Of a DNA stretch of 64,000 nt, positions 16,641 through 63,692 are shown in pieces. A program made the position numbers and the translations under genes. Numbering within the stretch: the first letter of the stretch is position 1; every line of letters starts with the position of its first letter. Source of the stretch: Macrostomum lignano. Taxonomy: Eukaryota. The notes under the pieces were generated by a model. It made no database searches. It was not told where the DNA came from and saw nothing but the letters and a program-made list of their open reading frames with translations. The stretch covers positions 62,001 to 126,000 of the forward strand of contig NIVC01000025.1 of the NCBI GenBank assembly GCA_002269645.1, given 5' to 3'.

Positions 16641-16765
16641 AATCAGCCTCTCGGATCCCCAGTTGCTCGGCTAACACCTCCCAGGTCCTCAATTCCGCCT
16701 TACCATTCTCCTTGCATGCTAATCGGTTTTCCGCATTTGTCGTCGTCAAGCATCTAAAAATAGCA

Positions 16766-21646: not shown

Positions 21647-22651
21647 TCAAGCGACGAGGTCGAAGAACTCGCGAATCTCAACCTCAGACATGCTCGAGTT
21701 GGCAATCGCCAGAGCTCTCAGGGTGCCGCTGAAATAATCATTCGGTGCTGGTGCAGTCCTGATCCGCAATCCGACGTACAGACAGGCGTTGGCGTTGATG
21801 ACTGAGCAAGGACTCGAATCACTTAAAGTCGGCAGGCTGCTTCTCAGAAGGAAGGAATCCTTCATGAAGACGTCGTACTCGCTTCCACTGACGGTTAATC
21901 CAAAGTTGATCCAGTCCTCCGAGCTGGCCGGGAGAGCGTCAGCTGGCGAGTAGATAAAAGGCAGAAGTGTTCCAGTGATTTGATTTGTTCGGGCGAACAA
22001 TTGTCTCGGAGAGCCGTACTCCCACAGGTGAACTCCGTGTCTCGTGGGGGCGTTCATGTTGTTGCAGTCGGTGAATTCAATGAACGGCTGCAATTTCGGC
22101 TGCCTCTTGATCTTGAGCAGCCAGGTAAGCCCGGTAGAGAAGTTGAGGCTCGACTTTTGCAGCATCGCATAGGCGGTTGTGCCATCGAACTTGGCGCCTT
22201 CGCTGCTCCACTCGACGTTCATCAGGTGGAGCCGGTTGGTGTCTTCATCAGCCTGGCACACCAGGTTCTCCAGTCTGCTCACGCTGTCGCCCAGCCACAC
22301 GCTGTTGAGCTTGGAGTTGATGGCTCTGTGATCGATCGGAAATCGGTAGAACACCTCGCAGTTGGCAGTTTTGCCAGGAATCAGACTGCGGCAGATCGAC
22401 TGGAAGTTGAAGATGGCACACGTGCCGGTGTCGGAGTTGAACTGGATCAGCAGAGCTCCGGTCAGGCCTGTCAGGAAGTCGCTCATGGCGCAGTGGGTCT
22501 CCGTGACGGCTCTGACGTGAGCCACCGCCACGGGGGAGCCATCGGGCACGCATTGGACTTTGGCGGCTTGGTACACGGACTGCTGCTGCTGGCAGTTGGC
22601 AAGGGTGGCAGCCAGCAGCAGCAGGTTGAGTGCGGCAGCAACGATTGACAT
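21647..22651 (-). CDS. Intronless secreted protein, 334 aa: signal peptide, PAN/apple-like cysteine domain, LamG/concanavalin A-like domain
   Basis: Hydrophobic N-terminus MSIVAAALNLLLLAATLANC; C-x20-C..FN..TGTC pattern; AKFDG..., W..FGLT, YFSGTLRALAI...MSEVEI pattern typical of Laminin_G_3; GC-rich coding-like composition. Domain calls made by eye. Confidence 0.75.
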   Translation of the reverse strand: MSIVAAALNLLLLAATLANCQQQQSVYQAAKVQCVPDGSPVAVAHVRAVTETHCAMSDFLTGLTGALLIQFNSDTGTCAIFNFQSICRSLIPGKTANCEVFYRFPIDHRAINSKLNSVWLGDSVSRLENLVCQADEDTNRLHLMNVEWSSEGAKFDGTTAYAMLQKSSLNFSTGLTWLLKIKRQPKLQPFIEFTDCNNMNAPTRHGVHLWEYGSPRQLFARTNQITGTLLPFIYSPADALPASSEDWINFGLTVSGSEYDVFMKDSFLLRSSLPTLSDSSPCSVINANACLYVGLRIRTAPAPNDYFSGTLRALAIANSSMSEVEIREFFDLVA

Positions 22652-39000: not shown

Positions 39001-40135
39001 CCAGATGTGACAGACACTGTTAAATTCTAACCAGATGTGACAGACACTGTTAAATTCTAACCAGATGTGACAGACACTGTTAAATTCTAACCAGATGTGA
39101 CAGACACTGTTAAATTCTAACCAGATGTGACAGACACTGTTAAATTCTAACCAGATGTGACAGACACTGTGAAATTCTAACCAGATGTGACAGACTTTTT
39201 GAAATAAATTCTATCCAGATGTGACAGACATTCCGAAAATGAGCCGCTTTGCTGAAACCCAGTGAAACTCACCTTCGGCGCCGTGGTCGGGGAGAACCGC
39301 TTAACCGGGACACCTTTGGAGTCCACCAGGAACTTGGTGAAGTTCCACTTGATGAAGTCGCCAAAGGTGCCAGACAGACGGTTCTTCAGGAACACGAACA
39401 GAGGATGGGTGGCGCTGCCGTTCACGTTGATCTTGGAGTACATGTCGAAGGCGACGTTCCAGCGAGCGATGTAGGCCTTGATCTCAGCCTCCGGCCAGGG
39501 CTCCTGGGAGCCGAACTGGTTGCAGGGGAAGGCGGCGATGGCCAGGCCGCGGTCAGCCAGTCGATTGTGCATCTCAACTAGCTGGGTGTAGTTCTTCTCG
39601 GTTGCGCCTCATTTGCAAGCCACGTTCACCACGATGAGAACGCGGCCCCTGGGGTTAGGAGGGAAAATATCAAAGTGCTATAGCTTAGGTCTATTTAATA
39701 ATATAACTAGCTATTATAACTAAAACTTGAGTACTCGAAAACTTACTTGTACTTGTCCATCGACACATTGTTGCCATCGATGTCGACAGCTTCGAAGTCG
39801 TAGACAGTGGATGGCTCCGCACTTGAAGCCTAAAAAAAATTAAAATGTCATTTACTTAGCTTGGAAAGTTATTTAGTTGTAGTAAAAATAGCAATTTTAA
39901 CACTAACACTAAACTAATATAAGTCCGGATAACAGTAACAAACTATTATTTAAGTTCAAATACAAAAACGCAGGGGAATAGTTAACGCTCTTTATTTGGC
40001 CCCTCTATAAACTTTTAAGTTTTACTAGCCAAAAACTGCAGTCAGCAAATCGCAAAAATCCGCGAGTCGGGAACCATTCCTAATCTTAGTTCACTATCAA
40101 ATAGCGCAAAAAATTAAGAAATACTTATGTACCAT
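36085..40135 (-). CDS. GPX4: Selenium-dependent phospholipid-hydroperoxide glutathione peroxidase (GPX4-type), 169 aa; exons 40135-40133 (ATG only), 39829-39747, 39648-39273, 36132-36085
   Basis: VYDFEAVDIDG, VVNVACK-U-GAT, FPCNQFGSQEP, IKWNFTKFLVD, RFSPTTAPK|DMEADVVKLL; phases consistent; length matches cytosolic PHGPx; ATG-only first exon is less certain. Confidence 0.92.
36280..37500. repeat. 22-bp minisatellite (GPx last intron)
   Basis: TTAGTCACCTGTCTTGTGTGTC. Confidence 0.95.
38195..39230. repeat. 32-bp to 30-bp graded minisatellite (GPx last intron)
   Basis: TGTGACAGACACTTTCTGAAATTCTATCTGGG grading to TGTGACAGACACTGTTAAATTCTAACCAGA. Confidence 0.93.
39609..39611 (-). other. In-frame TGA selenocysteine codon at the GPx active site
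   Basis: Minus strand GCT TGC AAA TGA GGC GCA ACC, the conserved GPx catalytic position; frame stays open on both sides. Confidence 0.92.
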
Positions 40136-43114: not shown

Positions 43115-46100
43115 ATGTTAAGTCAACTTCGTCACAGTTGCTTCAAGTTCAAAGCAAGTTTTCAAGGTCTGACCCGACCACCCCTTCGCTGGGCACGCCC
43201 ATCCTCATCAGCATTGCTGCAGCTTCCTGGCCATCAGACGCCAAGTCTGCAGTTGCAGCGTCAGCTACACGATAAGCTGGTGCACAATCGGTCTCTGCGC
43301 TATCGTTTGGTGATATTTGACAAGGATGGCACCTTGGTGTGCTTTCACTCCATGTGGGCGCCTTGGGCTCGAGGCTTGGCAAATCGGCTGGTGAAGGCTA
43401 GCGGCCTTGATGTGGCTGCCAAGGTGGGTTTCTGGGTGAGGGTGAGGTAGAGTGCCAGTTACAGGTGAGGGAGAGTGCCAGTTACAGGTGAGGGAGAGTG
43501 CCAGTTGCAGGTGAGGTAGAGTGCCAGTTACAGGTGAGGGAGAGTGCCAGTTACAGGTGAGAGAGAGTGCCAGTTACAGGTGAGGGAGAGTGCCAGTTAC
43601 AGGTGAGGTAGAGTGCCAGTTACAGGTGAGGAGAGTGCCAGTTACAGGTGAGGGAGAGTGCCAGTTACAGGTGAGGGAGAGTGCCAGTTACAGGTGAGGG
43701 AGAGTGCCAGTTACAGGTGAGGGAGAGTGCCAGTTACAGGTGAGGAGAGTGCCAGTTACAGGTGAGGGAGAGTGCCAGTTACAGGTGAGGTAGAGTGCCA
43801 GTTACAGGTGAGGTAGAGTGCCAGTTACAGGTGAGGGAGAGTGCCAGTTACAAGTACCGGACACCCAATTCCTTCCACTGATCCGGCAGGTTTACGGCAT
43901 CCTGGGAGTCTGCGAGCAGACCCAGCGTGCGGGTCCGGGCCTGCTGGCCGAGGGCACCAAAGCCCAGATGCGGGTAGCACTGGCGCAGATGCTGGCTCAC
44001 GAAGGCATGGACAAGGCCAAGGCCACCGCCATTGTTGAGGCCTGCGTGCCGGAGCCCGCTACGGATGCTGAGCACGTTAAGGAGCTGCACGATCTCAGCC
44101 AGCTGTTCGAGGTGCTGAGGCAGCACGGAGTGAAGATCGCCGTGTGCACCAGCGACCAGCGGGAGAGCACCATTGAGTCGCTTCGCCGGCTGGGGGTGAG
44201 GCGGGTGATGGTGTCTCAGGGAGGGTGGGGCAGGTGATGGTGTCTCAGGGTGAGGCGGGTGATGGTGTCTCAGGGAGGGTGGGGCAGGTGATGGTGTCTC
44301 AGGGTGGGGCGGGTGATGGTGTCTCAGGGAGGGTGGGGCGGGTGATGGTGTCTCAGGGTGGGCGGGTGATCTTGTCTCAGGGTGGGGTGGGTGATGGTGT
44401 CTCAGGGTGGGGCGGGTGATGGTGTCTCAGGGTGGGGCGGGTGATGGTGTCTCAGGGAGGGTGGGGCGGGTGATGGTGTCTCAGGGTGGGCGGGTGATCT
44501 TGTCTCAGGGTGGGGTGGGTGATGGTGTCTCAGGGTGGGGCGGGTGATGGTGTCTCAGGGTGGGGCGGGTGATGGTGTCTCAGGGTGGGGCGGGTGATGG
44601 TGTCTCAGGGTGGGGCGGGTGACTTAAAAATGTGTCTCAGCCTGACTCAAACAGATATTTCAGCATGCCTCAAACAGGTGTCTCAGCATGACTCAAACAT
44701 GTCTCAGCATGACTCAAACAGAAATTTCAGCATGCCTCAAACAGGTGTCTCAGCATGACTCAAACAGATATTTCAGCATGACTCAATCAAGAACCTCAGC
44801 ATGACTCAAACAAGAACCTCAGCATGACTCAAACAGATTTTTCAGCATGACTCAAACAGATATTTCAGCATGACTCAAACAGGAACCTCAGCGTGACTCA
44901 AACAGGTGTCTCAGCATGACCCTGATGCGCCTCCTCCCAGGTGTCCCACCTAGTTGACAAAGTGGTGTGCGCGGACGATCCAACCAGCCTGCCGAAGCCG
45001 GACCCGCACAACGCCCTGATGATCTGTGACGCTTTGAGCGTGCATCCAAAGGACACCGTGATGGTCGGGGACACGGCCACCGACATGCAGTTCGCTAAGC
45101 AGGCTGGTCTCGGCCTGGGGGTCGGCGTTCTGAGCGGCATTGGGAGGTGCGTTTTGTTGAATTCGGTAGCCCGTAAATTGGTCAGATCAATTTATAAATA
45201 TTGGTCAAACCAGTTTGTAAATTTGTTTGATTGATTCGTAAATTGGTGAAATCATTTTAGAAGTCTATAAGATAATTGTTTTAAATTGGTCAGATTAATT
45301 TGCTAATTGGTCAGAGTAATTAAAAAATGGTCTAAACAGTTCATAAGTTTGGTAGCGTAATTTGGTAGCAACACATAAGTTGATAAAATAAATTTACAAA
45401 TTGTTCAAATCAATTTGCAGGTTTTTTTAAACCAATTTACAGATTAGTCAATCCAATTTGCAGATTAGTCAAACCAATTTGCAGTTTAGTCAAACCAATT
45501 TGCAGTTTATTCAAACCAATTTGCAGATTAGTCAAACCAATTTGCAGTTTATTCAAACCAATTTGCAGATTAGTCAATCCAATTTGCAGATTAGTCAAAC
45601 CAATTTGCAGTTTAGTCAAACCAATTTGCAGATTATTCAAACCAATTTGCAGATTAGTCAATCCAATTTTCAGATTGGTCAAATCGATTTGCACATTGTT
45701 TATAATAAATTTAAAATGAACTATTTATTTTCGCTCTGTATTCTAGGAAAGCCGACTTGGAAGCTGCAGGCGCCAGCACAGTAGTAAACACTGTGGGCGA
45801 TGTGCTGCCAAATTTCTTCCCAGACCAGCCGATCAGCTTGACGGAGTCTGCGCGCCTCATCGCCGAGCGCGACTGGCGGCTGATCATCTGCGACAAGGAC
45901 GGCAGTCTGGCCGACGTGCGCACCCGCTGGTCGGAATGGGCGCTGCGGGTTGGCAACCGCCTGGCCGAAGCTACCTCCGAATCGGTGGCCGAAAATTTCT
46001 ACGATCTCATCGGATTCGACCCGGACACTGGCCGGATTCTGGGCGGTCCGTTGGCCGAGAGTCCGCTGTCCGATTTGCGCGATATGCTTGAGAGTCTGCT

Positions 46101-49100
46101 GCTGTTGAAGTGGCGGGTGGACGACAAGCAGCTGAGGGGAATTCTGGACCAGGTGAAATTCCATTGTCTACCTGGTTACCTTGAATTATGATGAGAAAGC
46201 CAATCATTTCTGCTCCATGGTGAAAATTGCGATTCTCTTCAGTCAAGTTCGGGATTTCCCTTAACCACTGTAATCTCGGATTTCTCTCACGTGAGTGCGG
46301 GATTCCCTTCGTTCCAATCGGGATTCCCCCCAATCCAACTCGGGATTCCCTTCAATCTAACTCGGGATTCCCCTCAATCCAACTCGAGATTCCCCTCCAT
46401 CTGATCGCGATTCCCCTCAATCCAACTCTGGATTCCCCCCAATCCAACTCGGGATTCCCCTCAATCCAATCGGAATTTCCCTTCAATCTAACTCGGGATT
46501 TCCCGAAATCCAACTCAGGATTTCCTTCAATCCAACTCGGGATTCCCATCAATCTAACTTGGGATTTCCCGAAATCCAACTCGGGATTTCCCTCAATCTA
46601 ACTCAGCTGATTCCCCTCAATCCAACTCGGGATTCCCTTCAGTCCAACTCGTGATTCCCCAACTCAGGATTCCCCTCAATCAAGCTGGCTACTCCGCCCC
46701 CCTCTGCAACCAATCCAAGGTGTGGGACGACGGCAGCTCGGTCAGCAACCGCGCCGCCGACTCGCTGGCCGCCGATGGCATCCCGGAGGCTCTGGCCGAC
46801 CTTCGCTCGCTCGGCTGCCGCGTCGCCGTGGTGACGTCGGACTCCCGAGCCAGCCTGAACCAGTTCCTCACCGACTTCAGCCTGGCCAGCCTGGTGGATT
46901 ACAGCCTGACCCCGGCCGAGCACCAGCCCTGGAGCGGCGCCTGCAAGTCGCAGCCGCTGCTGGCCGCCTGCCGCCTCGCCGGCGTCTCCCCAGCCGACGC
47001 CGTCGTTGTTGGCGACACTCGCGCCGATTTGTCCGGCGGCCGGCGCGCCCGTCTCGGCGCCACCGTCGGCGTCCTGAGCGGCATGTCGGGACCGGAGGCG
47101 CTGATGCCGCACGCCGATTTGCTGGTGCCGAACCTGCCAGGCTTGACCGGCCTGCTCAAGCGGCGGCCTGCAGCTGAGCTCGGCCGGAGGTCCTACTCCA
47201 CCTCCGCGGCGTCTGCCGAATACGATTACGTCATCGTTGGGGCGGGCAGCGCCGGCTGCGTATTGGCTAACCGATTGACCGAAGATTCCAATGTTCGCGT
47301 GCTGCTGGTGAGTAGCCTGTCTGGGTTATTTTTAGATCCTGGATGGGTTTGAATCTCAGCTGAACTTCAGGATCCTGAATGAGTTTGAAACTCAGGTGAA
47401 CTTCAGGATCCTGAATGAGTTTGAAACTCAGGTGAACTTCAGGATCCTGAATAAGTTTGAACCTCAGGGAAACTTTAGGATCCTGGATGAATTTAAGCTT
47501 CAGGTAAACTTCAGGATTCTGAATGAATTTGAGCTTTAGGTAAGCTTCAGGATTCTACTAGCAATCTACGCCCCCCGTTGGGGAGCCAAAGAAATGCAAT
47601 ACACGTTTTTTTAATAAGCTACATGTATCCTTGAAATATTAAAAAATCTCCTGTCAAACCTTGTAAGCCTTGACATGTCAGTAATTCCCCCCCACAAGCT
47701 TTAACATATCAACTTCCCCCCTTGACATCTCAGCAATGCCCCCAATAAGCCTCAGGTAAACTTCAGGATCCTGAATGAGATTCAGCTTAATCTTAACTTC
47801 ATGATTCTGAATGAGTTCGAGCTTGAGCTAAAGTTTTGTATCTTTAATACCCAGAGTAAAAATGAATATTCTTCCAGATCGAAGCCGGCCCCACCGACCG
47901 TCGCAACCTGTTCATCCACATGCCCGCCGCTCTCATGTACAACCTGTGCCACGACAAGTACAACTGGTACTATCACACTCTGCCGCAGAAGCACATGGAC
48001 TCCAGGGTGATGTACTGGCCGAGAGGTCGCGTCCTTGGTGGCAGCAGTTCGCTAAACGCTATGGTTTACGTTCGGGGTCATGCATTTGACTATGACAGGT
48101 AAATATAGGGGCAATTCATGTGTCTCACTCCTGCTATAATTTTTAACGCTCTTGCGATATCGAGAGCTGATTCAGAATATCCCATTTATCAATTATGAAT
48201 CTTGTGTATATATGAGGTGGGTTGCGCGGGACTGTAGATACAAGACGTCACGAGTCTGGGATGCACGGGTCATAAGCTTTCTGTTAAGTGTCATAGGCTG
48301 TATCAGGGGTCCGTTATGAAAGGGTCATATGCCTTTTGTTAAGGGGTCATAAGCATTTTGTTAAGGGGTCATTGGCCTTTTTCAGGGTCATAGACCTTGT
48401 TTTAAGGGGCCATAGGCCCGGAAGCACAGGTCATAAGCCCTGTACCAAGAGATCATGGGCCTCGGAGCAAGGGGTCATAATCTTCGTGTCAAGGAGTCAA
48501 TCTTCGTGTCAAGGGGTCATAATCTTGGTGTCAAGGAGTCATAATATTCGTGTCAAGGAGTCTTAATCTTCGTGTCAAGGAGTCAATCTTCGTGTCAAGG
48601 AGTCAATCTTCGTGTCAAGGAGTCAATCTTCGTGTCAAGGGGTCATAATCTTGGTGTCAAGGAGTCATAATATTCGTGTCAAGGAGTCTTAATCTTCGTG
48701 TCAAGGAGTCAATCTTCGTGTCAAGGAGTCTTAATCTTCGTGTCAAGGAGTCAATCTTCGTGTCAAGGGGTCATAATCTTGGTGTCAAGGAGTCATAATA
48801 TTCGTCTCAAGGAGTCAATCTTCGTGTCAAGGAGTCAATCTTCGTGTCAATGAGTCAATCTTCGTGTCAAGGAGTCAATCTTCGTGTCAAGGAGTCAATC
48901 TTGGTGTCAAGGGGTCATAGCCTGGTATTAAGGGGTCATAGCCTGGTGTTAAGGGGTCATAGCCTGGTGTTAAGGGGTCATAGCCTGGTGTTAAGGGGTC
49001 ATAGCCTGGTGTTAAGGGCTCATAGCCTGGTGTTAAGGGGTCATAGCCTGGTGTTAAGGGGTCATGTTTGTAGCAGAGGGGTCACAGAGTCAGCAATCTC

Positions 49101-52100
49101 GGCAGCTGATTGTCACCCCTCGGCCACCCCCAGGTGGGCCAAAGAAGGCGCCGCAGGCTGGTCCTACGCGGACTGTCTGCCCTACTTTCGCAAAGCTCAG
49201 CATCACGACGACCTGCCGGCTGACGATTACGTCGGCGGCGACGGGCCGCTGCACGTGTCGCGAGGTCGCACGGCGCATCCGCTGCACAGCGCCTGGCTAG
49301 CGGCCGGTCAGGAGGCCGGATATCCGCTTAGCGACAACTTGTACGGCTATCAGCAGGAGGGAGTTGGCTGGCTAGACATGACCGTGCACAATGGCAGGCG
49401 GTGGTCAACCGCTACAGCTTATCTTTGGCCGGCTGCCAAGAGGCCAAACTTGACTGTGGTTACCGACAAGCTGGTGACGAGGTAAAGGGTTGGATGAGTT
49501 GACTGCAAAAGTTTTGTTTGTTTGACTGCTCAAGTTGGGGATGTTTTTGGGAAGACTGCTCAAGTTGGGGATGTTTTTGGGAAGACTGCTCAAGTTGGGG
49601 ATGTTTTTGGGATAACTGCTCAAGTTGTGGATGTTTTTGGGATGACTGCTCAAGTTGTGGATGTTTTTGGGATGACTGCTCAAGTTGTGGATGTTTTTGG
49701 GATAACTGCTCAAGTTGGGGATGTTTTTGGGATGACTGCTCAAGTTGGGGATGTTTTTAGGATGAACGCTCAGGATAACTGCTTGAAGTTCAAGGATCAG
49801 AGTGATTTAGATCCTTGCTTGTGCTTGGGATCGGAGTGGTTGGGATTCAGATCACTGGCAGTCTGAGCAGTGCAAGCCCCACCCTCTCCCCTCCCCAGCC
49901 TGATGTTCGACGGTCTCCGTGCTACCGGCCTGCAGATGCAGGGCAGGCGTGGCGGCGGCGGCGACAGCCAGACGGTCCGCGCCAATCGCGAGGTCATTCT
50001 CAGCGGCGGCGCCATCAACTCGCCCCAGCTGCTCATGCTGTCCGGCATTGGGGACGCTGACCAGCTGCGCAATCTGGGCATCCCGCTGGTGCACCACCTG
50101 CCCGGAGTTGGTGCCAACCTCCAGGTGAGAGCCCATAGCACACACTACCCCGTAGCACCCACCACCCCATAGCACCCACCACCCCATAGCACCCACCACC
50201 CCATAGCAAACACTACCCCACAGCACCCACCACCCCATAGCACCCACCACCCCACAGCACTCACCAACCCGTACCACCCACCACCCTATAGCACCCACCA
50301 CCCCATAGCACCCACCACCCCATAGCACTTACTACCCCACAGCACCCACCAACCCGTACCACCCACCACCCCACAGCACCCACCACCCCATAGCATCCAC
50401 CACCCCACAGCACCCACCACCCTATAGCACCCACCACCCCATAGCACCTACCACCCCACAGCACCCACCAACCCGTACCACCCACCACCCCACAGCACCC
50501 ACCACCCCACAGCACCCACCACCACAAACGTATCTCACTGTCTACCTCACCGCTCCCACCGCCGTCAGGACCACCTGGAGCTCTACGTGCAGCAGCGGTG
50601 CACTCAGCCAATCACACTGTACAGCGCCCAGTGGAAATTCCCCTGGAACATGGTGGGCATCGGACTGCGCTGGCTGACCACCCAGACAGGCTGGGGCGCC
50701 ACGTCTCACCTAGAGACTGGCGGCTTCATCCGCACGGAGGCTGGCGTGCCTCATCCGGACGTGCAGTTTCACTTCCTGCCGTCTGTGGTCACGGATCACG
50801 GTCGGAAGTCGGGCAATTGTCACGCGTTTCAGGTAGGCATTGTTCATTAGGTGCTGGCATTATTGATTTTTTCTAATATTTCACATTGTTTTTCACTCCA
50901 CTTAATCCGCTTCACAAATATTATAATCCTACAATCTCCCAATGATCCAGTCCTAATCCGCTTCCCAAAGATCTTCCCATAATTTACTTTTAATAATCCA
51001 CTCACGATGATCCACCTCCGATAATCTACTCAATTATTACTTCTGATGATCTACTTCCAACAATCTACTTCCGATAATAAATTTCTGATAATCCACCTCC
51101 GATAATCCACTTCCCACAACCCACCTCCGATAATCCACTTCCCACAACTCACCTCCGATAATCCACTTCCCACAACCCACCTCCGATAATCCACTTCCCA
51201 CAACCCACCTCCGATAATCCACTTCCCACAACCCACCTCTGATAATCCACTTCCGATAGTCTACCTTCGGTAATCCATTTCCAAGAAATATTTTATCTTC
51301 GATAATTCATCTCTAATAATATCCTCCCGATAATCTACTCCCGATGATCCAATTCCAATAATGTACTTTCGATAATCCATTACAGATAATACACTTCTAC
51401 ATTCCACCTCCGATAATTCATCTCTGAACATCTATTTCAACTGGATAAGTTATTTCGACAATTAACTTCCGATAATCCACTCCCGATTATTTACCTCCAA
51501 TTAATATTATTAGATCAAACTATAGTCAGAGTTTATCCCAGACCGTTAATAATCATATCCAAACGAATCCTCCAGGTGCACGTGGGCCCCATGCGGCCGG
51601 AGAGCCGCGGCACGCTTCGGCTTGCCTCGGCGGACCCGCGCCAGGCGCCCCTGCTGGATCCAAACTACATGGCCACCGAGCGGGACAGGTGGGAGATGCG
51701 GCAGTGCATCCGGCTGGCTAGGGAGATTTTCGCCCAGCCCGCGTTCGACCAGTACAGAGGTGAGATAATAGTAAATCCCCATAGCAACTGTCATTCCTAT
51801 ACTAACAGCATCTATTGCCAAATAAAAAATCATCACAATAGCAACGATTTGGCTAGCTCCATAGCAACGGTTAGGCTCCCTCCATAGCAACGATTTGCCC
51901 CCCCCATAGCAACAATTTGCCCCCATAGCAACGATTTGCCCCCATAGCAGCGATTAGCCCCCATAGCAACGGTTAGGCCCCCATAGCAACGGTTAGGCCC
52001 CCATAGCAACGGTTAGGTCCCCCATTGCAACGGTTAGGCCCCATAGCAACAATTTGCCCCCATATCAACGGTTAATATGGCCCCCCATATCAAGGGGGCC

Positions 52101-52597
52101 TAATAGCAACGTTTAGTCCGCCATAGCAAGGGTTAGAACTAATACCAATCATTAGCCCTCTTAGCAACGATTAGCCTCCCTAGCAACGATTGATCCCCAT
52201 GGTAACAACCATTCGATCTCCAGGCTCCGAGCTGCAGCCGGGCTCCGAGGCCCGCACCGACGCCCAGCTGGACGCATTCGTCCGGGCCGCCTCCGACTCG
52301 GCCTACCACCCGTCCTGCACCTGCCGCATGGGCCCGGCCGCCGACCCCACGTCCGTGCTGGACGAGAACCTCCGGGTTCGCGGACTCGACGGCTTGCGCG
52401 TCGTCGACGCCTCGGCGATGCCCTCGATTGTGTCAGGAAATTTGAACGGGCCAACCATCATGCTGGCCGAGAAGGCCGCCGACATCATCAGGGGCCGCCA
52501 GCCGCTGCCACCAGCCACCGAGGTCCCCGTGTGGCAGCCGGCCCAGCCGGAAAGGCAGCGAGACGGGGAGCCGGTCAGGCGATTGGAGCAGGTTTAA
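43115..52597 (+). CDS. CHDH: Mitochondrial-type fusion protein, 1143 aa: presequence, two HAD-like phosphatase domains, choline dehydrogenase (GMC oxidoreductase). Exons 43115-43423, 43890-44195, 44941-45146, 45747-46152, 46720-47307, 47878-48098, 49134-49481, 49899-50124, 50569-50832, 51576-51759, 52224-52597
   Basis: HAD1: [25 protein letters not shown]; HAD2: [25 protein letters not shown]; CHDH: [105 protein letters not shown]; 3432 nt with all phases consistent. Confidence 0.9.
43435..43855. repeat. 23-bp minisatellite filling HAD-CHDH intron 1
   Basis: GAGTGCCAGTTACAGGTGAGGGA; each unit contains CAG|GTGAG. Confidence 0.95.
44196..44920. repeat. Two adjacent minisatellites filling HAD-CHDH intron 2
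   Basis: G-rich 25-mer GGTGATGGTGTCTCAGGGTGGGGCG starting at the donor site, then TCAGCATGACTCAAACAG-type units. Confidence 0.92.
45430..45680. repeat. 21-bp minisatellite (HAD-CHDH intron 3)
   Basis: TTTGCAGATTAGTCAAACCAA. Confidence 0.92.
46240..46680. repeat. About 22-bp degenerate minisatellite (HAD-CHDH intron 4)
   Basis: CCCTCAATCCAACTCGGGATT units. Confidence 0.9.
47350..47825. repeat. 36-bp minisatellite interrupted by a 190-bp insert (HAD-CHDH intron 5)
   Basis: AACTTCAGGATCCTGAATGAGTTTGAAACTCAGGTG units at 47360-47560, resuming at about 47750. Confidence 0.8.
48330..49065. repeat. Composite 20/21-bp minisatellites (HAD-CHDH intron 6)
   Basis: TCTTCGTGTCAAGGAGTCAA and GGGGTCATAGCCTGGTGTTAA units. 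Confidence 0.92.
49530..49780. repeat. 30-bp minisatellite (HAD-CHDH intron 7)
   Basis: CAAGTTGGGGATGTTTTTGGGATGACTGCT. Confidence 0.93.
50130..50525. repeat. 17-bp CA-rich minisatellite (HAD-CHDH intron 8)
   Basis: CACCCACCACCCCATAG. Confidence 0.92.
51000..51500. repeat. Degenerate minisatellite (HAD-CHDH intron 9)
   Basis: CCACCTCCGATAATCCACTTCCCACAAC-type units. Confidence 0.88.
51860..52205. repeat. About 20-bp minisatellite (HAD-CHDH intron 10)
   Basis: CCCCCATAGCAACG plus ATTTG or GTTAGG units. Confidence 0.9.
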
Positions 52598-54920: not shown

Positions 54921-57884
54921 ATGAGCATGAGACCGCCGAAGCCGCAGGGTCCGCTGCAGGTGGACAAGGCTACTCACCACTCGCTGGAGCTGAACTGGGA
55001 GGCGCAGCTGCAGCAGTCGGCCGCAGAGCAGAGCGGCGAGGACGGCCGACTTCGAGTAGAGGTCCAGTGGTGCCGATTTGAGAACACCTGGGAGGTGGCC
55101 TACAAAGGATTCGATGTGCGCTGCGTCTGCGCAGGCCTGGAGCCCAACCAGGAGTACCAGGTGGGCAGTTGAGCTCTGCGAAATTCGAAATCTTGATGGC
55201 TGTTTAATTTAACTCTGAGGGACATTGCTAATACAGATGACGCCAATTCCGTTAGAAACGTTACCGTGACAAGAATTGCTATAGAGAGTCATTGCAAACA
55301 ACTCACTCTAGCGACTATGGGGCGACTCTTGTGACTTTTTAGCGACTGGTGCGATGGAGAAGCGGTTTTTGAGTCTGGAGCGCATCACGTAAGCTGCAGA
55401 ATCGTAAAAGAGTCGTGAAAAAGTCGTCCAAGACTCGTTGTGTTAGCGCTTAACTTTCTACTGACTCAAGTAGACTAAAGAGAGTTGTTATAACTGCGAA
55501 ATGCGATTCTAGCTCGTATAATTCGTAAAGTGACGCAAATGCGCTTTAGACTCACACTCAGTGATTCTACAGAAACTCTGGCACGCCTCAGATGCGACTG
55601 ACTCTACGGCCTCAGAGTATCATTGAAGCGCCCCGTGGTTTCTTCAGAGTCGCAGACATAAAACGCCTCAAAATGACTTTGTCAATTCTTTTCCATTTTA
55701 CCTGTGTTATCTGTAACGACTCTGAGGAGATGCAATTGACTCTGGGACCGCTTCTTAGCCTACATGTAGGTACCGTTTTTAGCGGAATGGTACAATACAT
55801 TCTTGCAGAAGCCTTGAAAATCGTGTCTCGTTGCGTCTAAACTCAATGTGAGCGATGGTTTACTAGCGAGGAGGAGCACTGATACGTACACAGGCATGGC
55901 ACAGGCTCACAGGATGTCCCTTCCCTCTACGTGATTACAGTTGAGCTACTCCAGCCCGACAGCAAGAATTCGTTTGTTTTTTAGATTTGTGGATTGAGTG
56001 CCCGCAGCCCCTGGATGTAAGAGCAACTGCAGCACCCCCCCCCCCTCGTCAAAACCCAGGTGCGAATCCGGTTCGGCAACGGGCACGGCTGGGGCGACTT
56101 CAGCGAGCCGGTGACATCGAAGACCGCCGCCAAGCCGTTCAGCGGCGAGGATCTGCACCGGTGTATTCGTCGACGAAATTTGGACGCTCTGGTGAATGCG
56201 CTGGAGACCGGGGAGGCCAACCCCAATGCGCCGGATGACAAAGGTTTTACGCCTCTGGCTGAAGCGGCTCTGGAAGGCTTGCTGGACTATTGTCAGGCGC
56301 TGCTGGACCATCGGGCTGATGTCAACTGGTCTGGAGACAATGGTGCGTCGAAGGGTTGAGGCTGGATTAGTTTACATATTACCGTTGTGGTGTACATGCC
56401 AAATGAATTTTACTTCCTGATAGAGTGTACCCTCAGGGAGAAATAAATATTTTTTCATCACCAAGACAATGATTGCATTTGATCTGTGGTAGTAAAGATT
56501 ACCATTATTGTACAATAATTTAGCATGCACAGCACGTTACTCTGTTGATTTTATGTAGTTCTGTAGTAAAATGATTTTTTCTTATCAGAATTCTTATCTT
56601 AAATTGGCGTCCAAAAATTACACAATGTTTGAGTTTTTTCGCCGTGTTATTCGACAGTACAGTGGTGATTTTTTAAATTAATGTGTTAGTACATGGATTC
56701 TAGAGTGTGTGGCAGAAGGAGGACTTAAGTGGGACGGGAAACCTCGTTTCTTAGAAAATTTTTGAAGGCGGCTTTTCCCGAAAAAATACACTACGGAGAT
56801 AGGAAGTTTTTATTTTTTCAGCAAAAAATTGCTATTGCTTTTGATAGGAGGCAGATCCAGTGTTCATTTTTTGATATGTTGTGCCTTTCTTATTGCTCTA
56901 TCGATATTCATAGCTTTTCGTTCAGAAAATTAGGATTCTATGTTAATTTTTTTTCTACGTACATTTCCTTTACCTAAACAATAATAAAAATGCATGGCAC
57001 AGCTTCAATCTTTGGTTTTATGAATCTATTTTGTCATCTCTGTTACAAATATTTGTTACTCAGTCAGCTAAGGATGATAAAATAGACTCATAAAACCAAA
57101 GAGCCGAGCTGTGCCATTTTAATGGTTTTTAGGCACAAGACAAGTGCAGATGTACGTAGAATAAAAATAACGTATTTTTAAAGTAATAAAGTATTTTTCG
57201 GAAAATCCGGCCTTCAAAACTTTTCCAAGAAACGAGGTTTCCCGTCCTTCTACTTAAGTCGTCCTTGGTGTTGCATTGCTGACAAAATAAACATTGCTGA
57301 TCAAAGTCGTTTGTCTAATGTTTAATTTTCAAAGAACTTCCCGATCCTGCACCGCCGCAGGCAAGACCTGCCTGATGCTGGTGGCCTACAAAGGCAAGCC
57401 GGAGGTGCTTCAGTGGCTGCTGGAGTCGGCCAACGCCAGTTTGCATCCGCGCGATCGCAACGGGCTCAGCGCGCTGCACTACGCGGTGGACGGCGAACAG
57501 CTGGACAATGTCCGACTCCTGCTGGACGCCGGAGCCGACCTGCACGCCAAGGACAACGCGGGCTGCACGCCGCTGCTCCGCTGCGCCCAGCACCGCAATA
57601 ACGGCAACTCAGCATTGGCAGTCGAGCTGCTCAACCGTGGAGCTCTAGTCGACGAGACCGACTCCAGCGGGCAGACGGCGCTGTTTTACTGCGTGATGAA
57701 CCGGCACGAGAAGCTGGCCGCTGTGCTGCTGCATCACGGAGCCGACATCCGGGCCACCAACAGCCGCGGCCTGTCCGTGCTGAAGGCCACAGACGGCCAG
57801 CAACCGGACCGCAAGGCGATGCGGGAGCTGCTGCTTGAGCACGAGGAGAAACGCCGGTCAGAGCAGCAGCAGAAATCCGCTTAA
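54921..57884 (+). CDS. FANK1: Fibronectin type III and ankyrin repeat protein 1, 348 aa; exons 54921-55160, 56060-56342, 57361-57884
   Basis: N-terminal FN3 (PPKP..V.K.THHSLELNW, GLEPNQEYQVRIR), EDLHRC, then ankyrin repeats (GFTPL, GKTCLMLVAYKG, GLSALHYAVDG, GCTPLLRC, GQTALFYC); architecture and length match FANK1. Confidence 0.88.
56716..57266. mobile_element. Palindromic MITE with about 75-bp TIRs and a second internal inverted pair (FANK1 intron 2)
   Basis: AAGGAGGACTTAAGT..GGACGGGAAACCTCGTTTCTT.. vs ..AAGAAACGAGGTTTCCCGTCC..ACTTAAGTCGTCCTT; inner pair near 56991-57040 and 57072-57120. Confidence 0.8.
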
Positions 57885-61835: not shown

Positions 61836-63692
61836 ATGCCCAACTCCGTCCAATTAAAAGCCAACAAAATCCACAGAATGCACACAGGAAACACAGGTAG
61901 AGTTGAGGTTTTATCTAGTTTAGTCAAACAGAAGATCTGATAGAAGTAAAAAAACGCAAGGGTAAGTGAGTAGACTGTTGCTGGACGCAGCCAATTCCCC
62001 GCAGACATGAGGATAGAGCGAAAGGGTCAGAGAGGAGACGCCGGCTAGCCACAACCAATCAGCGCAGAGATCAGGATAGAGCGAAAGGGTCAGAGAGGAG
62101 ACACCGGCTAGCCACAACCAACCAGCGCAGAGATTAGGATAGAGCGAAAGGGTCAGAGAGGTGACGCCGGCTGGCCGCAACCAATCAGCACAGAGGTGAG
62201 GATAGAGCGAAAGGGTCAGAGAGGTGACGCCGGCTGGCCGCAACCAATCAGCACAGAGGTGAGAATAGAGCGAAAGGGTCAGAGAGGAGACGCCGGCTGG
62301 CCGCAACCAATCAGCGCGGAGATAAGAAGAGAGCATCAGAATTAAACTAAGACACCAACCGGTTTATAGTGAATCTCCACTAATATTTTCTTCAAGTTGC
62401 AGATGAGCCCTACTCATCTCTTTGGATCGTCAAGAAAACTACGGATGAGATTCTAGCGAACTTAAGGCTCTTCGTGGCTCCAACCGCATCTGCGGTGAGC
62501 ATAGTGGGCCTTCTTCTATCCGTATGGGCGTTCGCTAGAACCTGGCGCGTCCTCAAAGGCAAGGACCTGCTGCTGTGCGCCAATATCGCGGCCGACTTCG
62601 TCACCGTTGTTACCACGTAATTTTCAATCGTTTGATTATCAAATGGCCAAGCCGCACACGTTACCAGGCACAAAAATAATTAGGCAAGTTAGCAAAAAGT
62701 GAAGTATAAGAGATAGTCTACTATGAGTAGTAATAGCAGGAGGGCTGCGGGCACCCTTCGGCGACATCGTCCTAGAAGCAGCGCCGAAGTAATTCTGCTC
62801 ATTACGCTGCTCGGCACGCACTCATACACACGCTCACACAGGGTCGTCAGTCATGTACACTCTCACCTAGCAGTCCTTGCCAATGTCCCTTCCTGGTGTC
62901 CGCAGGCTGACTGCCCGCGAGTTTCTCAACGGCGGCCTCGGTAGTCGAATGTCGCTAGCGCTGCCCCACCTGGCTCTGAACTGGGCCTGCAAGCTGTGGG
63001 CCTTCTTCTGGGTGCTCAGCAACAGCCTGTCGTCCAATTTGATTTGTCTGATGGCCGCGGACCAGATCTACGCCCTGTGCTGGCCGCTGCGCCACCGAAC
63101 TCGCATGACAAAGCGGAAATACTGCCTGACGCTCTTCTTGTTCGTCTTTCTCTTTGCCTGCGCAGCAGCTCAGGGCGTCCTGTACGAGACTTACGACTAC
63201 TATGGGCAGAGGTACTGCTACCTGCCACTCATGCTGATCAAAGTCGTCTCCGAGCTCACCCAGGCCTACGCCTCGCTGCTACTTAACGGCGTTGTTAGCA
63301 GCATAGCTCTGGCCGTTAGCAACGTCTTCATCTGCGCCAAGATCTTGTCGATTCGAGCAGCCAGTGCGAAGCTGCAGCAGCAGGCGGACCAGCAGGCGGT
63401 GGACCTGCGCGGCGCCAGAAGCCTGCTGGTCACTGCCGCCGTCTACCTACTGGTCTCGCTGCCCCGAGTGGCGACGTACTTTTTAGCCTATCTCAACATC
63501 CGCTACAACATGTGGGATAACGGGGACATCATGAACCCACTGCTGCTGGCGCTGGCTAACGTTTTCAACTACCTGTTCTACGTGTACTGCTCGGTTAACT
63601 GGCTGCTCTGCGGTCTGCGAATTAGGCTGTTTCGCCACCAGTTCAACCAGCTCCTGGGCCGCCTCAGGCAGCGCGCCACTGGGCCTGCGTAG
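61836..63692 (+). CDS. Divergent rhodopsin-like (class A) GPCR, about 353 aa; exons 61836-61896 (tentative), 62403-62616, 62906-63692
   Basis: Seven hydrophobic helices; TM3 Cys (ACKLW), DRY-like AADQIYALCWPLR, ECL2 Cys (YCY), TM6 LLVSLPR, TM7 SVNWLLC, helix 8 RLFRHQF; phases consistent. Confidence 0.82.
61990..62320. repeat. About 63-bp minisatellite, about 5 copies (GPCR intron 1)
   Basis: ..CGCCGGCTGGCCGCAACCAATCAGCACAGAGGTGAGGATAGAGCGAAAGGGTCAGAGAGG..; one CCAAT per unit. Confidence 0.9.

What the first reader, a model, noticed from the sequence alone, without database searches (positions are those of the whole stretch)
43115..52597. Two tandem HAD phosphatase domains fused in frame to choline dehydrogenase
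Seen: the 1143-aa model has an N-terminal presequence-like stretch, two complete HAD domains (DKDGTL and DKDGSL motif I, TSD, Lys, GDxxxD all retained) and a full GMC choline dehydrogenase. The HAD2 C-terminus and the CHDH Rossmann motif lie in one uninterrupted exon (46720-47307), so the fusion is not a gene-prediction merge across an intron. Known: vertebrate CHDH is a stand-alone mitochondrial enzyme making betaine aldehyde, and a HAD-family phosphorylcholine phosphatase (PchP) exists in Pseudomonas. Inference: a Rosetta-stone fusion channelling phosphocholine to choline to betaine aldehyde for glycine betaine osmolyte or methyl-donor synthesis, which would assign a function to an uncharacterised DKDG-type HAD family. 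I do not know of a characterised animal enzyme with this architecture but cannot exclude database entries.
Basis: partly seen in the sequence, partly recalled or inferred. Interest (0 to 1): 0.85.

Follow-up and report, generated by a model that had tools for sequence, protein, structure and literature searches.

The report
Conserved HAD phosphatase–choline dehydrogenase fusion gene
This flatworm gene really does join two phosphatase-type domains to choline dehydrogenase in one protein. The same fusion is already present, unstudied, in the databases for molluscs, ribbon worms, acorn worms, copepods and others, so it is an old, conserved and uncharacterised enzyme rather than a one-off oddity.

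Summary
An 11-exon, all GT-AG gene (43115-52597, + strand) gives a 1143-aa protein with these parts:
- a presequence-like N-terminus;
- a canonical HAD-IA domain (DKDGT);
- a divergent second HAD domain (DKDGS);
- a disordered linker;
- a complete choline dehydrogenase (CHDH).

Exon 5 carries the end of HAD2 and the CHDH Rossmann motif in one frame.

The window is Macrostomum lignano. Two transcript-derived GenBank proteins (PAA78948.1, PAA93511.1) match at 99%. A paralogous locus has identical exon boundaries, with 20 synonymous and 7 non-synonymous codon differences.

The fusion is not new to the databases. At least 57 fused proteins were retrieved from Mollusca, Nemertea, Annelida, Hemichordata, crinoids, amphioxus, copepods and acoels. 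They are named "uncharacterized" or "choline dehydrogenase-like". I found no paper describing them.

The HAD domain also exists alone in nematodes (C. elegans F45E1.4).

Its substrate is unknown. Phosphocholine is plausible but only circumstantially supported.

One new point: the HAD–CHDH linker carries a conserved R-x-(F/Y)-S-T motif, like the end of a mitochondrial presequence. The precursor may therefore be cut into separate enzymes after import.

Interest is moderate.

The parts
43115..52597 (+). Whole coding region of the HAD-HAD-CHDH gene. Exons: 43115-43423, 43890-44195, 44941-45146, 45747-46152, 46720-47307, 47878-48098, 49134-49481, 49899-50124, 50569-50832, 51576-51759, 52224-52597. 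Product 1143 aa.
   Evidence: all GT-AG, no internal stop; 99% identity and 100% coverage to M. lignano PAA78948.1; identical exon boundaries in paralogous locus L004.
43115..43270 (+). N-terminal presequence-like stretch (aa 1-52), probably a mitochondrial targeting signal.
   Evidence: no Asp or Glu before D53; 5 Arg and 2 Lys in the first 50 residues; pLDDT below 50 over residues 1-61. Targeting itself is inferred.
43301..45801 (+). HAD1 (aa 63-292, exons 1-4), the canonical member of the F45E1.4-type HAD-IA family. Motif I DKDGT at 43319-43333; motif II CTSD at 44142-44156; Lys motif at 44989-45006; GDTATD at 45064-45084.
   Evidence: Pfam Hydrolase 1.2e-24, HAD_2 5.9e-23; 41-47% identity to orthologous domains. 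AF2 pLDDT 89.9. C1-capped HAD fold.
45883..47142 (+). HAD2 (aa 320-550, exons 4-5), a divergent second HAD domain. Motif I DKDGS at 45892-45906; VTSD at 46828-46842; ACKSQP at 46939-46956; GDTRAD at 47008-47028.
   Evidence: Hydrolase 1.8e-15; 24-32% identity to other HAD domains; 27 of 38 family-invariant residues kept; predicted folded, pLDDT about 80-90.
47143..47214 (+). Disordered HAD2-CHDH linker (aa 551-574) with the conserved presequence-end motif RRSYSTS (aa 565-571, 47185-47205). In-frame Met codons M531 (47083) and M538 lie just upstream.
   Evidence: the R-x-[FYL]-[SAC]-T motif occurs in 50 of 57 fused orthologues, against a shuffle mean of 0.6 and maximum of 4; a similar motif ends the presequence of stand-alone CHDHs; pLDDT below 50 at residues 559-575 (P0001 numbering).
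47215..52594 (+). Choline dehydrogenase (aa 575-1143, exons 5-11). FAD Rossmann motif GAGSAG at 47239-47256; active-site segment [11 protein letters not shown] at 52301-52333.
   Evidence: GMC_oxred_N 1.2e-56, GMC_oxred_C 6.4e-41. PRK02106 804.5 bits (cutoff 605); the motifs are invariant across 27 orthologues.
46720..47307 (+). Exon 5, a single exon spanning HAD2 motifs II-IV, the linker and the start of CHDH.
   Evidence: one ORF, 46651-47352; 98.98% identical with no gaps in the paralogous locus.

Best explanation
This is the Macrostomum lignano orthologue of an old bilaterian gene. In that gene, a HAD-IA phosphatase of the family represented by C. elegans F45E1.4 was fused upstream of mitochondrial choline dehydrogenase. 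In the spiralian phyla sampled here, including this flatworm, the HAD module is present twice.

Shown:
- The gene, its exon structure and its three folded modules.
- Its conservation under purifying selection.
- Its wide phylogenetic spread.
- Fused mRNAs in oyster.

Inferred from homology: the C-terminal module oxidises choline to betaine aldehyde at the mitochondrial inner membrane.

Inferred, with my probability for each step:
1. The N-terminal presequence imports the whole precursor into mitochondria (about 0.8).
2. HAD1 is an active Mg-dependent phosphomonoesterase (about 0.8). Its substrate is a phosphorylated amino-alcohol, most likely phosphocholine, so that it supplies choline for glycine betaine synthesis (about 0.35).
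3. HAD2 is either a second activity of altered specificity or a non-catalytic partner (about even).
4. The linker motif RRS-Y-STS is the retained end of the ancestral CHDH presequence and still works as a processing site. After import the precursor would then be cut into a HAD-HAD protein and a mature CHDH made in 1:1 amounts, not a channelling enzyme (about 0.4).
For: Gene and domains.

The fusion is real:
- Transcript-derived M. lignano models PAA78948.1 and PAA93511.1 match at 99%. The annotation method is described in PMC5730564.
- The paralogue L004 has the same exons, with 20 synonymous and 7 non-synonymous changes.
- The oyster 1191-aa ORF is uninterrupted on two RNA contigs.
- On L087 the HAD2-CHDH junction lies in one genomic ORF.

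Spread. Two HADs plus CHDH occur in molluscs, nemerteans, Owenia and Macrostomum. One HAD plus CHDH occurs in Ptychodera, Glandiceps, Anneissia, Antedon, Branchiostoma belcheri, copepods and acoels.

Rosetta-stone partner: stand-alone about 300-aa orthologues at 44-50% identity in nematodes, including C. elegans F45E1.4, which itself has a presequence-like N-terminus.

Phosphatase chemistry: Asp-x-Asp with Asp+2 retained in both domains, and a C1-capped HAD fold.

Circumstantial links to choline or osmolytes:
- The Litoditis marina F45E1.4 orthologue rises at high salinity, 1.8-2.2x in mRNA and 2.2-2.9x in protein (PMC9025465 Table 2).
- The closest bacterial relatives (38-41% identity) end an operon for a PhnS/PhnT2-like ABC importer, a type that takes up 2-aminoethylphosphonate-like compounds. 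In 12 of 74 loci they sit with a dimethylglycine-oxidase-like DAO+GcvT gene.
- One locus has a betA-like gene 1 kb away.

Linker: motif in 50 of 57 orthologues against 0.6 expected, a similar motif at the end of stand-alone CHDH presequences, and a disordered linker.
Against: - No enzymatic data exist for any member of this HAD family, as far as I could find.
- The domain is not a member of PHOSPHO1-type (PF06888) or PchP-type phosphocholine phosphatases.
- Bacterial bet-gene linkage is nearly absent, 1 of 80 loci. More distant bacterial relatives sit in sugar-type operons with SBP_bac_1 and RpiR genes.
- Phosphocholine is known as a cytosolic intermediate. No mitochondrial pool is established (own knowledge).
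- Vertebrates and starfish have CHDH without the HAD.
- The L. marina study lists no choline dehydrogenase among salinity-induced genes.
- Cleavage at the linker is inferred from a short motif only.
- The deep HAD1/HAD2 phylogeny is unresolved.
Confidence: 0.6

Rival explanations
1. The HAD module has a substrate unrelated to choline. Candidates include a general mitochondrial sugar-phosphate or metabolite-repair phosphatase, or a flavin-nucleotide hydrolase serving the FAD enzyme. On this reading the fusion reflects only shared targeting or co-expression.
For: - All family and structure matches are generic HAD-IA phosphatases: phosphoglycolate, sugar-phosphate and NANP types, with E-values from about 1e-16 in sequence and TM 0.6-0.7.
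- Distant bacterial relatives lie in sugar-type transporter operons.
- bet genes are almost never nearby.
- Plant riboflavin kinase/FMN hydrolase is a precedent for a HAD fused to flavin metabolism (own knowledge).
Against: - The fusion with CHDH specifically has been kept across many phyla for several hundred million years.
- The family signature FDKDGTLxCFHxMWxPW is invariant and aromatic-rich, which points to a specific small-molecule pocket.
- The closest bacterial relatives associate with an aminophosphonate-type importer and an N-methyl-amine oxidase.
- The nematode orthologue is salt-induced.
Confidence: 0.3
2. The locus mainly yields separate products. A CHDH-only mRNA or protein would start inside exon 5 (M531 or M538) and use the linker as its own presequence, with a HAD-HAD product made separately. 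The 1143-aa fusion would be a minor isoform.
For: - An older UniRef model of M. lignano CHDH is 613 aa, which is the length from M531 to the C-terminus.
- B. floridae and B. lanceolatum CHDH models of 640-648 aa lack the HAD core.
- The linker resembles the end of a presequence.
Against: - There is no stop codon or splice site between HAD2 and CHDH.
- The transcript-based annotation, which cuts at trans-splice and poly(A) signals, kept one 1145-aa product at both loci.
- Full-length fused ORFs sit on oyster RNA contigs.
- The stretch from M531 has acidic residues at positions 5 and 11, which is poor for a presequence start.
Confidence: 0.12
3. HAD2 of this protein is a catalytically dead or regulatory pseudo-phosphatase, for example a dimerisation partner or substrate-binding module for HAD1. 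It would not be a second enzyme.
For: - In molluscs the second copy has DLHGT, DLNGT or DFHGT, and in Owenia the first copy has DKNGT, so Asp+2 is lost in one copy.
- M. lignano HAD2 is the most divergent domain (24-32% identity). It has lost 11 of 38 family-invariant residues, including F16 and the D157/K163-P164/N168 region.
Against: - M. lignano HAD2 keeps both Asp of motif I, the motif II Thr, a nearby Lys and GDxxxD.
- It is predicted to be well folded.
- It shows 1 non-synonymous against 4 synonymous changes between paralogues.
- Nemerteans keep DKDG in both copies.
Confidence: 0.4
4. The architecture is an artefact: an assembly chimera or a gene-prediction read-through.
For: None found.
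Against: - Single-exon junction.
- Two M. lignano loci with the same structure.
- Dozens of independent genomes and RNA assemblies.
Confidence: 0.01

Closest known systems
Mitochondrial choline dehydrogenase (CHDH; bacterial BetA), GMC oxidoreductase family
   Same: The C-terminal 569 aa have GMC_oxred_N and GMC_oxred_C, the GAGSAG FAD motif and the AYHPSCTC(R/K)MG active-site segment. They score 804 bits against PRK02106. One search found about 70% identity between the related B. belcheri protein and vertebrate CHDH.
   Different: It is preceded by about 570 aa carrying two HAD domains. Vertebrate, starfish and bacterial enzymes have only a presequence or nothing there.
C. elegans F45E1.4 and other stand-alone nematode/copepod HAD-IA proteins (uncharacterised; auto-named 'phosphoglycolate phosphatase')
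   Same: They belong to the same HAD family, at 44-50% identity over the whole domain. They share the signature FDKDGTLxCFHxMWxPW and a presequence-like N-terminus.
   Different: They are separate genes and are not linked to a GMC gene. F45E1.4 lies on chromosome X with histone and FCH/SH3 neighbours.
MtlD of Acinetobacter baumannii, a bifunctional mannitol-1-phosphate dehydrogenase/phosphatase (PDB 7OCN and related entries)
   Same: An N-terminal HAD-IA phosphatase is fused to a dehydrogenase. It is a structural match to HAD1 (TM about 0.62) and an NCBIfam hit. From my own knowledge, it makes a compatible solute under salt stress, so the logic is the same.
   Different: The dehydrogenase fold is different (NAD(P)-dependent, not a GMC flavoenzyme), and the order of reactions is dehydrogenase first, then phosphatase. 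It has one HAD, not two. It is bacterial and cytosolic. There is no specific sequence relationship beyond the superfamily (about 20% identity).
Known phosphocholine phosphatases: PHOSPHO1/PHOSPHO2 (Pfam PF06888) and Pseudomonas PchP
   Same: They belong to the HAD superfamily and have an Asp nucleophile.
   Different: There was no PF06888 hit, and no PchP-like hit in Pfam, NCBIfam or PDB sequence searches. They are different HAD subfamilies, with cytosolic/matrix-vesicle or periplasmic locations (own knowledge).
Mitochondrial polyprotein precursors cut by the processing peptidase (yeast Arg5,6; S. pombe Rsm22-Cox11) – own knowledge
   Same: There is an N-terminal presequence, two enzymes of one pathway in one ORF, and an internal R-x-(F/Y)-(S/A) motif in a disordered linker.
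   Different: Cleavage has not been shown for any HAD-CHDH protein. The resemblance rests on a motif and its conservation.

Membership tests
HAD superfamily phosphatase, subfamily IA (C1 cap) | Motif I DxDx(T/V) with the nucleophile Asp and the Asp+2 acid/base | tested here: met
   HAD1 has DKDGT (aa 69-73) and HAD2 has DKDGS (aa 323-327).
HAD superfamily phosphatase, subfamily IA (C1 cap) | Motif II Ser/Thr, motif III Lys, motif IV (G/S)Dxxx(D/E) | tested here: met
   HAD1: CTSD, LPKPDP, GDTATD. HAD2: VTSD, GDTRAD. The HAD2 Lys is offset by 2 residues in the alignment (ACKSQP), so motif III of HAD2 is only probable.
HAD superfamily phosphatase, subfamily IA (C1 cap) | Pfam HAD models above the gathering score; helical cap inserted between motifs I and II | tested here: met
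   PF00702 scores 88.2 and 58.3 bits (cutoff 26.4); PF13419 scores 82.3 and 41.7 bits (cutoff 23.8). The AF2 model has helices at 16-120 between strand 1 and motif II. Foldseek top hits are C1-capped HAD-IA enzymes.
HAD superfamily phosphatase, subfamily IA (C1 cap) | Mg-dependent phosphoryl-transfer activity | not testable with these tools
   Needs an enzyme assay.
Choline dehydrogenase (GMC oxidoreductase) | GMC_oxred_N and GMC_oxred_C domains with an N-terminal GxGxxG FAD motif | tested here: met
   (192.4 and 140.6 bits); GAGSAG at aa 583-588.
Choline dehydrogenase (GMC oxidoreductase) | Score above the curated family cut-off for choline dehydrogenase | tested here: met
   PRK02106 subfamily: 804.5 bits against a cutoff of 605. 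The bacterial equivalog TIGR01810 (betA) scores 721.0, just under its cutoff of 732.1.
Choline dehydrogenase (GMC oxidoreductase) | Conserved active-site His segment, and orthology to animal CHDH | tested here: met
   [11 protein letters not shown] is present and invariant in 27 orthologues. In one search, stand-alone CHDHs of vertebrates, starfish and Branchiostoma were the highest-scoring proteins lacking a HAD domain, found with an orthologous fused query.
Known phosphocholine phosphatases (PHOSPHO1-type PF06888; PchP) | Sequence membership of the family model | tested here: not met
   No PF06888 hit at E<=0.01 for either HAD domain. None of the families listed by NCBIfam (best 25 of 39 for HAD1; all 16 for HAD2) is a phosphocholine phosphatase. 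No such hit among the best 60 of 94 PDB matches.
Phosphonoacetaldehyde hydrolase (PhnX) and PhnX-like TIGR03351 | Score above the family cut-off; Asp+2 replaced, and a Schiff-base Lys in the cap (own knowledge) | tested here: not met
   TIGR03351 scores 70.7 bits against a cutoff of 218.9; TIGR01422 scores 45.8 against 220. Asp+2 is present in both domains.
Mitochondrial polyprotein precursor processed by MPP | N-terminal presequence plus an internal R-2/R-3 type cleavage motif in an exposed linker | tested here: inconclusive
   Presequence-like composition. The motif is RRSYSTS here and occurs in 50 of 57 orthologues, against 0.6 expected. The linker has pLDDT below 50. The motif definition comes from my own knowledge.
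Mitochondrial polyprotein precursor processed by MPP | Demonstrated cleavage into two mature proteins | not testable with these tools
   Needs immunoblot or N-terminal proteomics.

The most novel reading that the evidence does not exclude
The F45E1.4-type HAD family would be the missing mitochondrial phosphocholine (or phospho-amino-alcohol) phosphatase of invertebrates. Together with phosphoethanolamine methylation, it would give them a diet-independent route to the osmolyte glycine betaine. The HAD-CHDH gene would encode a mitochondrial polyprotein that the processing peptidase cuts at the conserved R-x-(F/Y)-S-T linker motif into stoichiometric phosphatase and dehydrogenase.
Probability: 0.2. 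Interest if true: 0.65.

Novelty: new variant of a known kind. Interest (0 to 1): 0.42.

Why it matters
Glycine betaine is a major osmolyte and methyl donor in marine invertebrates, and choline dehydrogenase is its entry enzyme.

In at least eight phyla that enzyme is encoded behind one or two phosphatase domains of an uncharacterised family. This points to an unrecognised step that is physically or stoichiometrically coupled to choline oxidation.

The same phosphatase is a stand-alone, apparently mitochondrial gene in C. elegans (F45E1.4). The hypothesis can therefore be tested cheaply by genetics and enzymology in a standard model, which would assign a function to a family now auto-annotated as 'phosphoglycolate phosphatase' or 'uncharacterized'.

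The conserved presequence-like motif in the linker would, if it is used, add an animal example of a mitochondrial polyprotein.

The value is moderate. The parts are ordinary enzyme families, the sequences are already public, and nothing here overturns known biochemistry.

Tried and rejected
1. Bacterial bet-gene neighbourhood. I fetched 80 loci encoding the closest bacterial relatives. The recurrent context is instead a PhnS/PhnT2-like ABC importer, with or without a DAO+GcvT oxidase.

2. The PDB match of that importer's binding protein (5T1P) has no named ligand, so it is uninformative.

3. The representative-library search collapsed essentially all fused proteins into one or two 50% clusters. 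It gave no taxonomic detail.

4. A neighbour-joining tree of HAD domains (one search timed out) recovers molluscan HAD2 as a clade (75%). It does not resolve whether the flatworm duplication is shared with other spiralians.

6. About 800-aa 'single-HAD' ENA/Logan proteins. At least the one inspected (P0373 on L087) is a truncated gene call of a two-HAD gene, so I did not count them as a separate architecture. Some about 330-aa 'stand-alone' metatranscriptome HADs (P0038, P0066) are likewise fragments of fusions.

7. Literature. Six searches on the fusion and its betaine context found no description of it. The oyster betaine-gene paper (PMC11849188) and the Pyropia betaine paper (PMC6356786) do not mention a HAD domain.

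8. Phosphonatase (PhnX) identity is rejected on scores and on the retained Asp+2.

Full report
**What is in the sequence**

Translating the region in three frames and joining the open segments at canonical splice sites gives 11 exons on the + strand: 43115-43423, 43890-44195, 44941-45146, 45747-46152, 46720-47307, 47878-48098, 49134-49481, 49899-50124, 50569-50832, 51576-51759 and 52224-52597. All introns are GT-AG.

- Pfam finds two HAD domains (aa 63-292 and about 320-550), followed by GMC_oxred_N and GMC_oxred_C.
- NCBIfam places the last 569 aa in choline dehydrogenase: PRK02106 at 804.5 bits against a cutoff of 605. The bacterial betA equivalog scores 721, just under its cutoff of 732.
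- Both HAD domains carry the catalytic motifs. HAD1 has DKDGT, CTSD, KPDP and GDTATD. HAD2 has DKDGS, VTSD, a Lys in ACKSQP and GDTRAD.
- Exon 5 lies inside one open frame, 46651-47352. It encodes HAD2 motifs II-IV, the linker and the GAGSAG Rossmann motif.

**Whether it is a real gene product**

The window is Macrostomum lignano. PAA78948.1 (BOX15_Mlig009934g2) is 99% identical over the full length, and a second locus encodes PAA93511.1. The GenBank annotation of that assembly was made from RNA-seq-based transcripts, cut at experimentally mapped trans-splice and poly(A) sites (PMC5730564). A transcript spanning all three modules therefore exists.

The paralogous locus L004 has the same 11 exon boundaries with no indels in exons. 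Its intron lengths differ up to about 2.7-fold. It shows 20 synonymous against 7 non-synonymous codon differences, none of them in HAD1 and one in HAD2.

Independent evidence from other species:
- The oyster orthologue (Magallana gigas XP_011440921.3, 1191 aa) is an uninterrupted ORF on RNA contigs from two runs.
- In an unrelated 6.5-Mb genomic contig, the C-terminal part of HAD2, the linker and all of CHDH form one 2451-nt ORF.

An artefact is excluded.

**How common it is**

Searches with the full protein and with the amphioxus orthologue retrieved at least 57 fused proteins.
- Two HADs plus CHDH (about 1150-1235 aa): bivalves, including freshwater Sinanodonta and Dreissena; gastropods; cephalopods; nemerteans; the annelid Owenia; and Macrostomum.
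- One HAD plus CHDH (about 860-1120 aa): the hemichordates Ptychodera and Glandiceps; the crinoids Anneissia and Antedon; Branchiostoma belcheri; copepods; and acoels.
- Stand-alone CHDH: vertebrates and starfish.

The sources name these proteins 'uncharacterized protein', 'choline dehydrogenase, mitochondrial-like' or 'Choline dehydrogenase'. Six full-text searches on the fusion and its betaine context found no paper describing it. Two betaine-pathway papers I opened do not mention a HAD domain. The architecture is therefore common but, as far as I can tell, uncharacterised.

**The HAD family**

A profile of the canonical domain (A1; invariant signature I-F-D-K-D-G-T-L-x-x-F-x-x-x-W, consensus FDKDGTLICFHSMWxPW) finds stand-alone proteins of about 300 aa at 44-50% identity in many nematodes. 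They include C. elegans F45E1.4. Others occur in the copepods Eurytemora and Neocalanus and in Lingula.

F45E1.4 lies on chromosome X, away from any GMC gene. It has its own presequence-like N-terminus.

There is no close solved structure. The best sequence match has E about 1e-16. An AlphaFold model of HAD1 (pLDDT 89.9) matches generic C1-capped HAD-IA phosphatases at TM 0.6-0.72. Among them is the phosphatase domain of the bifunctional mannitol-1-phosphate dehydrogenase/phosphatase MtlD.

The domain is not a member of the PHOSPHO1 (PF06888), PchP or PhnX families. Retention of Asp+2 argues for phosphomonoester chemistry rather than phosphonatase chemistry.

**The two copies**

- M. lignano HAD1 is canonical (41-47% identity to orthologues).
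- HAD2 is the most divergent domain in the set (24-32%). It keeps 27 of 38 family-invariant residues, including both motif I Asp, the motif II Thr and GDxxxD. It is predicted to be folded.
- In molluscs the second copy reads DLHGT, DLNGT or DFHGT, and in Owenia the first copy reads DKNGT, so one copy has lost the acid/base Asp. Nemerteans keep DKDG twice.
- A neighbour-joining tree supports a molluscan HAD2 clade but leaves the deeper history open.

**Clues to function**

1. Rosetta-stone logic. The HAD is fused to CHDH in many phyla and separate in nematodes, and both forms have presequence-like N-termini.
2. In the marine nematode Litoditis marina, the F45E1.4 orthologue is among 69 genes raised at high salinity at both mRNA (1.8-2.2x) and protein (2.2-2.9x) level (PMC9025465 Table 2). 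Choline dehydrogenase is not listed there.
3. The closest bacterial relatives are mostly Chloroflexota, at 38-41% identity. Of 74 loci with a HAD ORF, 39 have a PotA/PhnT2-like ATPase (434 bits against a cutoff of 458) and 28 have a PhnS-like binding protein. The usual gene order is binding protein, two permeases, ATPase, then HAD. Twelve loci, including three Deltaproteobacteria genomes, also carry a dimethylglycine-oxidase-like DAO+GcvT gene. This fits a phosphorylated or phosphonylated, possibly N-methylated, amino-alcohol. It does not prove one.

I rate phosphocholine or a close analogue as the single most likely substrate, at about 0.35. An unrelated substrate is about 0.3, and the rest is open.

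The HAD-CHDH linker is variable in length and sequence. Even so, it carries R-x-[FYL]-[SAC]-T within 60 residues of the Rossmann motif in 50 of 57 fused proteins. Shuffled linkers give a mean of 0.6 and a maximum of 4. In M. lignano the motif is RRSYSTS (aa 565-571).

Stand-alone CHDHs end their presequences with similar strings at about the same distance from the Rossmann motif. The full-length AlphaFold model has pLDDT below 50 in exactly three stretches: the N-terminal 61 residues, the HAD1-HAD2 junction and this linker. Its pTM is 0.52, so there is no confident packing between domains.

From my own knowledge, R-x-(F/Y/L)-(S/A) is the classical R-3 processing motif (MPP cleavage followed by Icp55 trimming). 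Mitochondrial polyproteins such as yeast Arg5,6 are cut at internal sites of this kind.

The conserved motif therefore suggests one of two things. The imported precursor may be cleaved into HAD-HAD and CHDH proteins, or a CHDH-only isoform may use the linker as its presequence. An older 613-aa M. lignano model has exactly the length from M531 to the C-terminus. Either would weaken the 'substrate channelling' reading while keeping the idea of co-regulated, stoichiometric partners.

**Verdict**

The finding is real and correctly described, and its interpretation is reasonable but unproven. Its novelty was overstated, because the architecture is widespread in public data. What remains of interest is:
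- an uncharacterised, conserved phosphatase family tied to choline oxidation;
- a recurrent degenerate second copy;
- a possible polyprotein processing site.

All three can be tested with ordinary experiments.

Noticed in passing
window 43424-52223 (all 10 introns of the gene): Each intron consists largely of a different minisatellite (period 17-36 nt, about 6-29 copies). Examples are 43441-43852 (23-mer x18), 44194-44622 (25-mer x17), 45391-45697 (21-mer), 46298-46660 (22-mer), 48468-49065, 49523-49772 (30-mer) and 50132-50523 (17-mer x23). Several arrays start at or within 20 nt of the 5' splice site, and their units carry GGTGAG-like and CAG-like ends. Intron lengths differ up to about 2.7-fold in the paralogous locus while the exons are unchanged.
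   Followed up: partly
window 46651-47352; protein aa 531: An older UniRef model of M. lignano 'Choline dehydrogenase' (A0A1I8FV72, 613 aa) has exactly the length from the in-frame Met531 inside exon 5 to the C-terminus. That is a CHDH-only reading of the same locus.
   Followed up: partly
L087 725-4451 (ENA ERZ25069866, 6.5-Mb contig): A mollusc-like two-HAD CHDH gene was split by a prokaryote-style gene caller into a 273-aa ORF ending in VIFDLHGTL and an 816-aa ORF. The roughly 800-aa ENA and Logan proteins listed probably include more such truncated calls, and not only true single-HAD forms.
   Followed up: yes
proteins P0358, P0364 (Branchiostoma lanceolatum / B. floridae CHDH, 640-648 aa): These amphioxus CHDH models lack the HAD core. 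Upstream of the linker they keep a stretch resembling the last strands of the B. belcheri HAD domain (GVLRGLGSHKD...ADFLSG). This could reflect exon skipping, a degraded HAD or model differences.
   Followed up: no
bacterial loci L009, L011, L017, L022, L030, L034, L041, L045, L055, L061, L075, L076 and others: There is a recurrent operon in Chloroflexota. Its order is a PhnS-like binding protein, two permeases, a PhnT2-like ATPase and then the HAD gene. It is sometimes preceded by a dimethylglycine-oxidase-like DAO+GcvT gene and often followed by a GGDEF/EAL protein of about 1360 aa. The same HAD-DAO/GcvT pairing occurs in three Deltaproteobacteria genomes. The transported substrate is unknown.
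   Followed up: partly
window 9195-13686, 16700-18820, 21647-22651, 39177-39572, 57294-57884, 62877-63692: Other genes in the window are a class II aminoacyl-tRNA synthetase (ThrRS-like), eIF3L/Paf67, a 334-aa ORF on the minus strand with no Pfam hit, a glutathione peroxidase, an ankyrin-repeat protein and a rhodopsin-type GPCR. The GSHPx and ankyrin neighbours are the same at the paralogous locus.
   Followed up: partly
PMC9025465 Table 2 (Litoditis marina): The orthologue of the stand-alone HAD (F45E1.4) is up-regulated at high salinity at both mRNA and protein level. The aldehyde dehydrogenases alh-9 and alh-11 rise with it. Choline dehydrogenase itself is not listed.
   Followed up: partly
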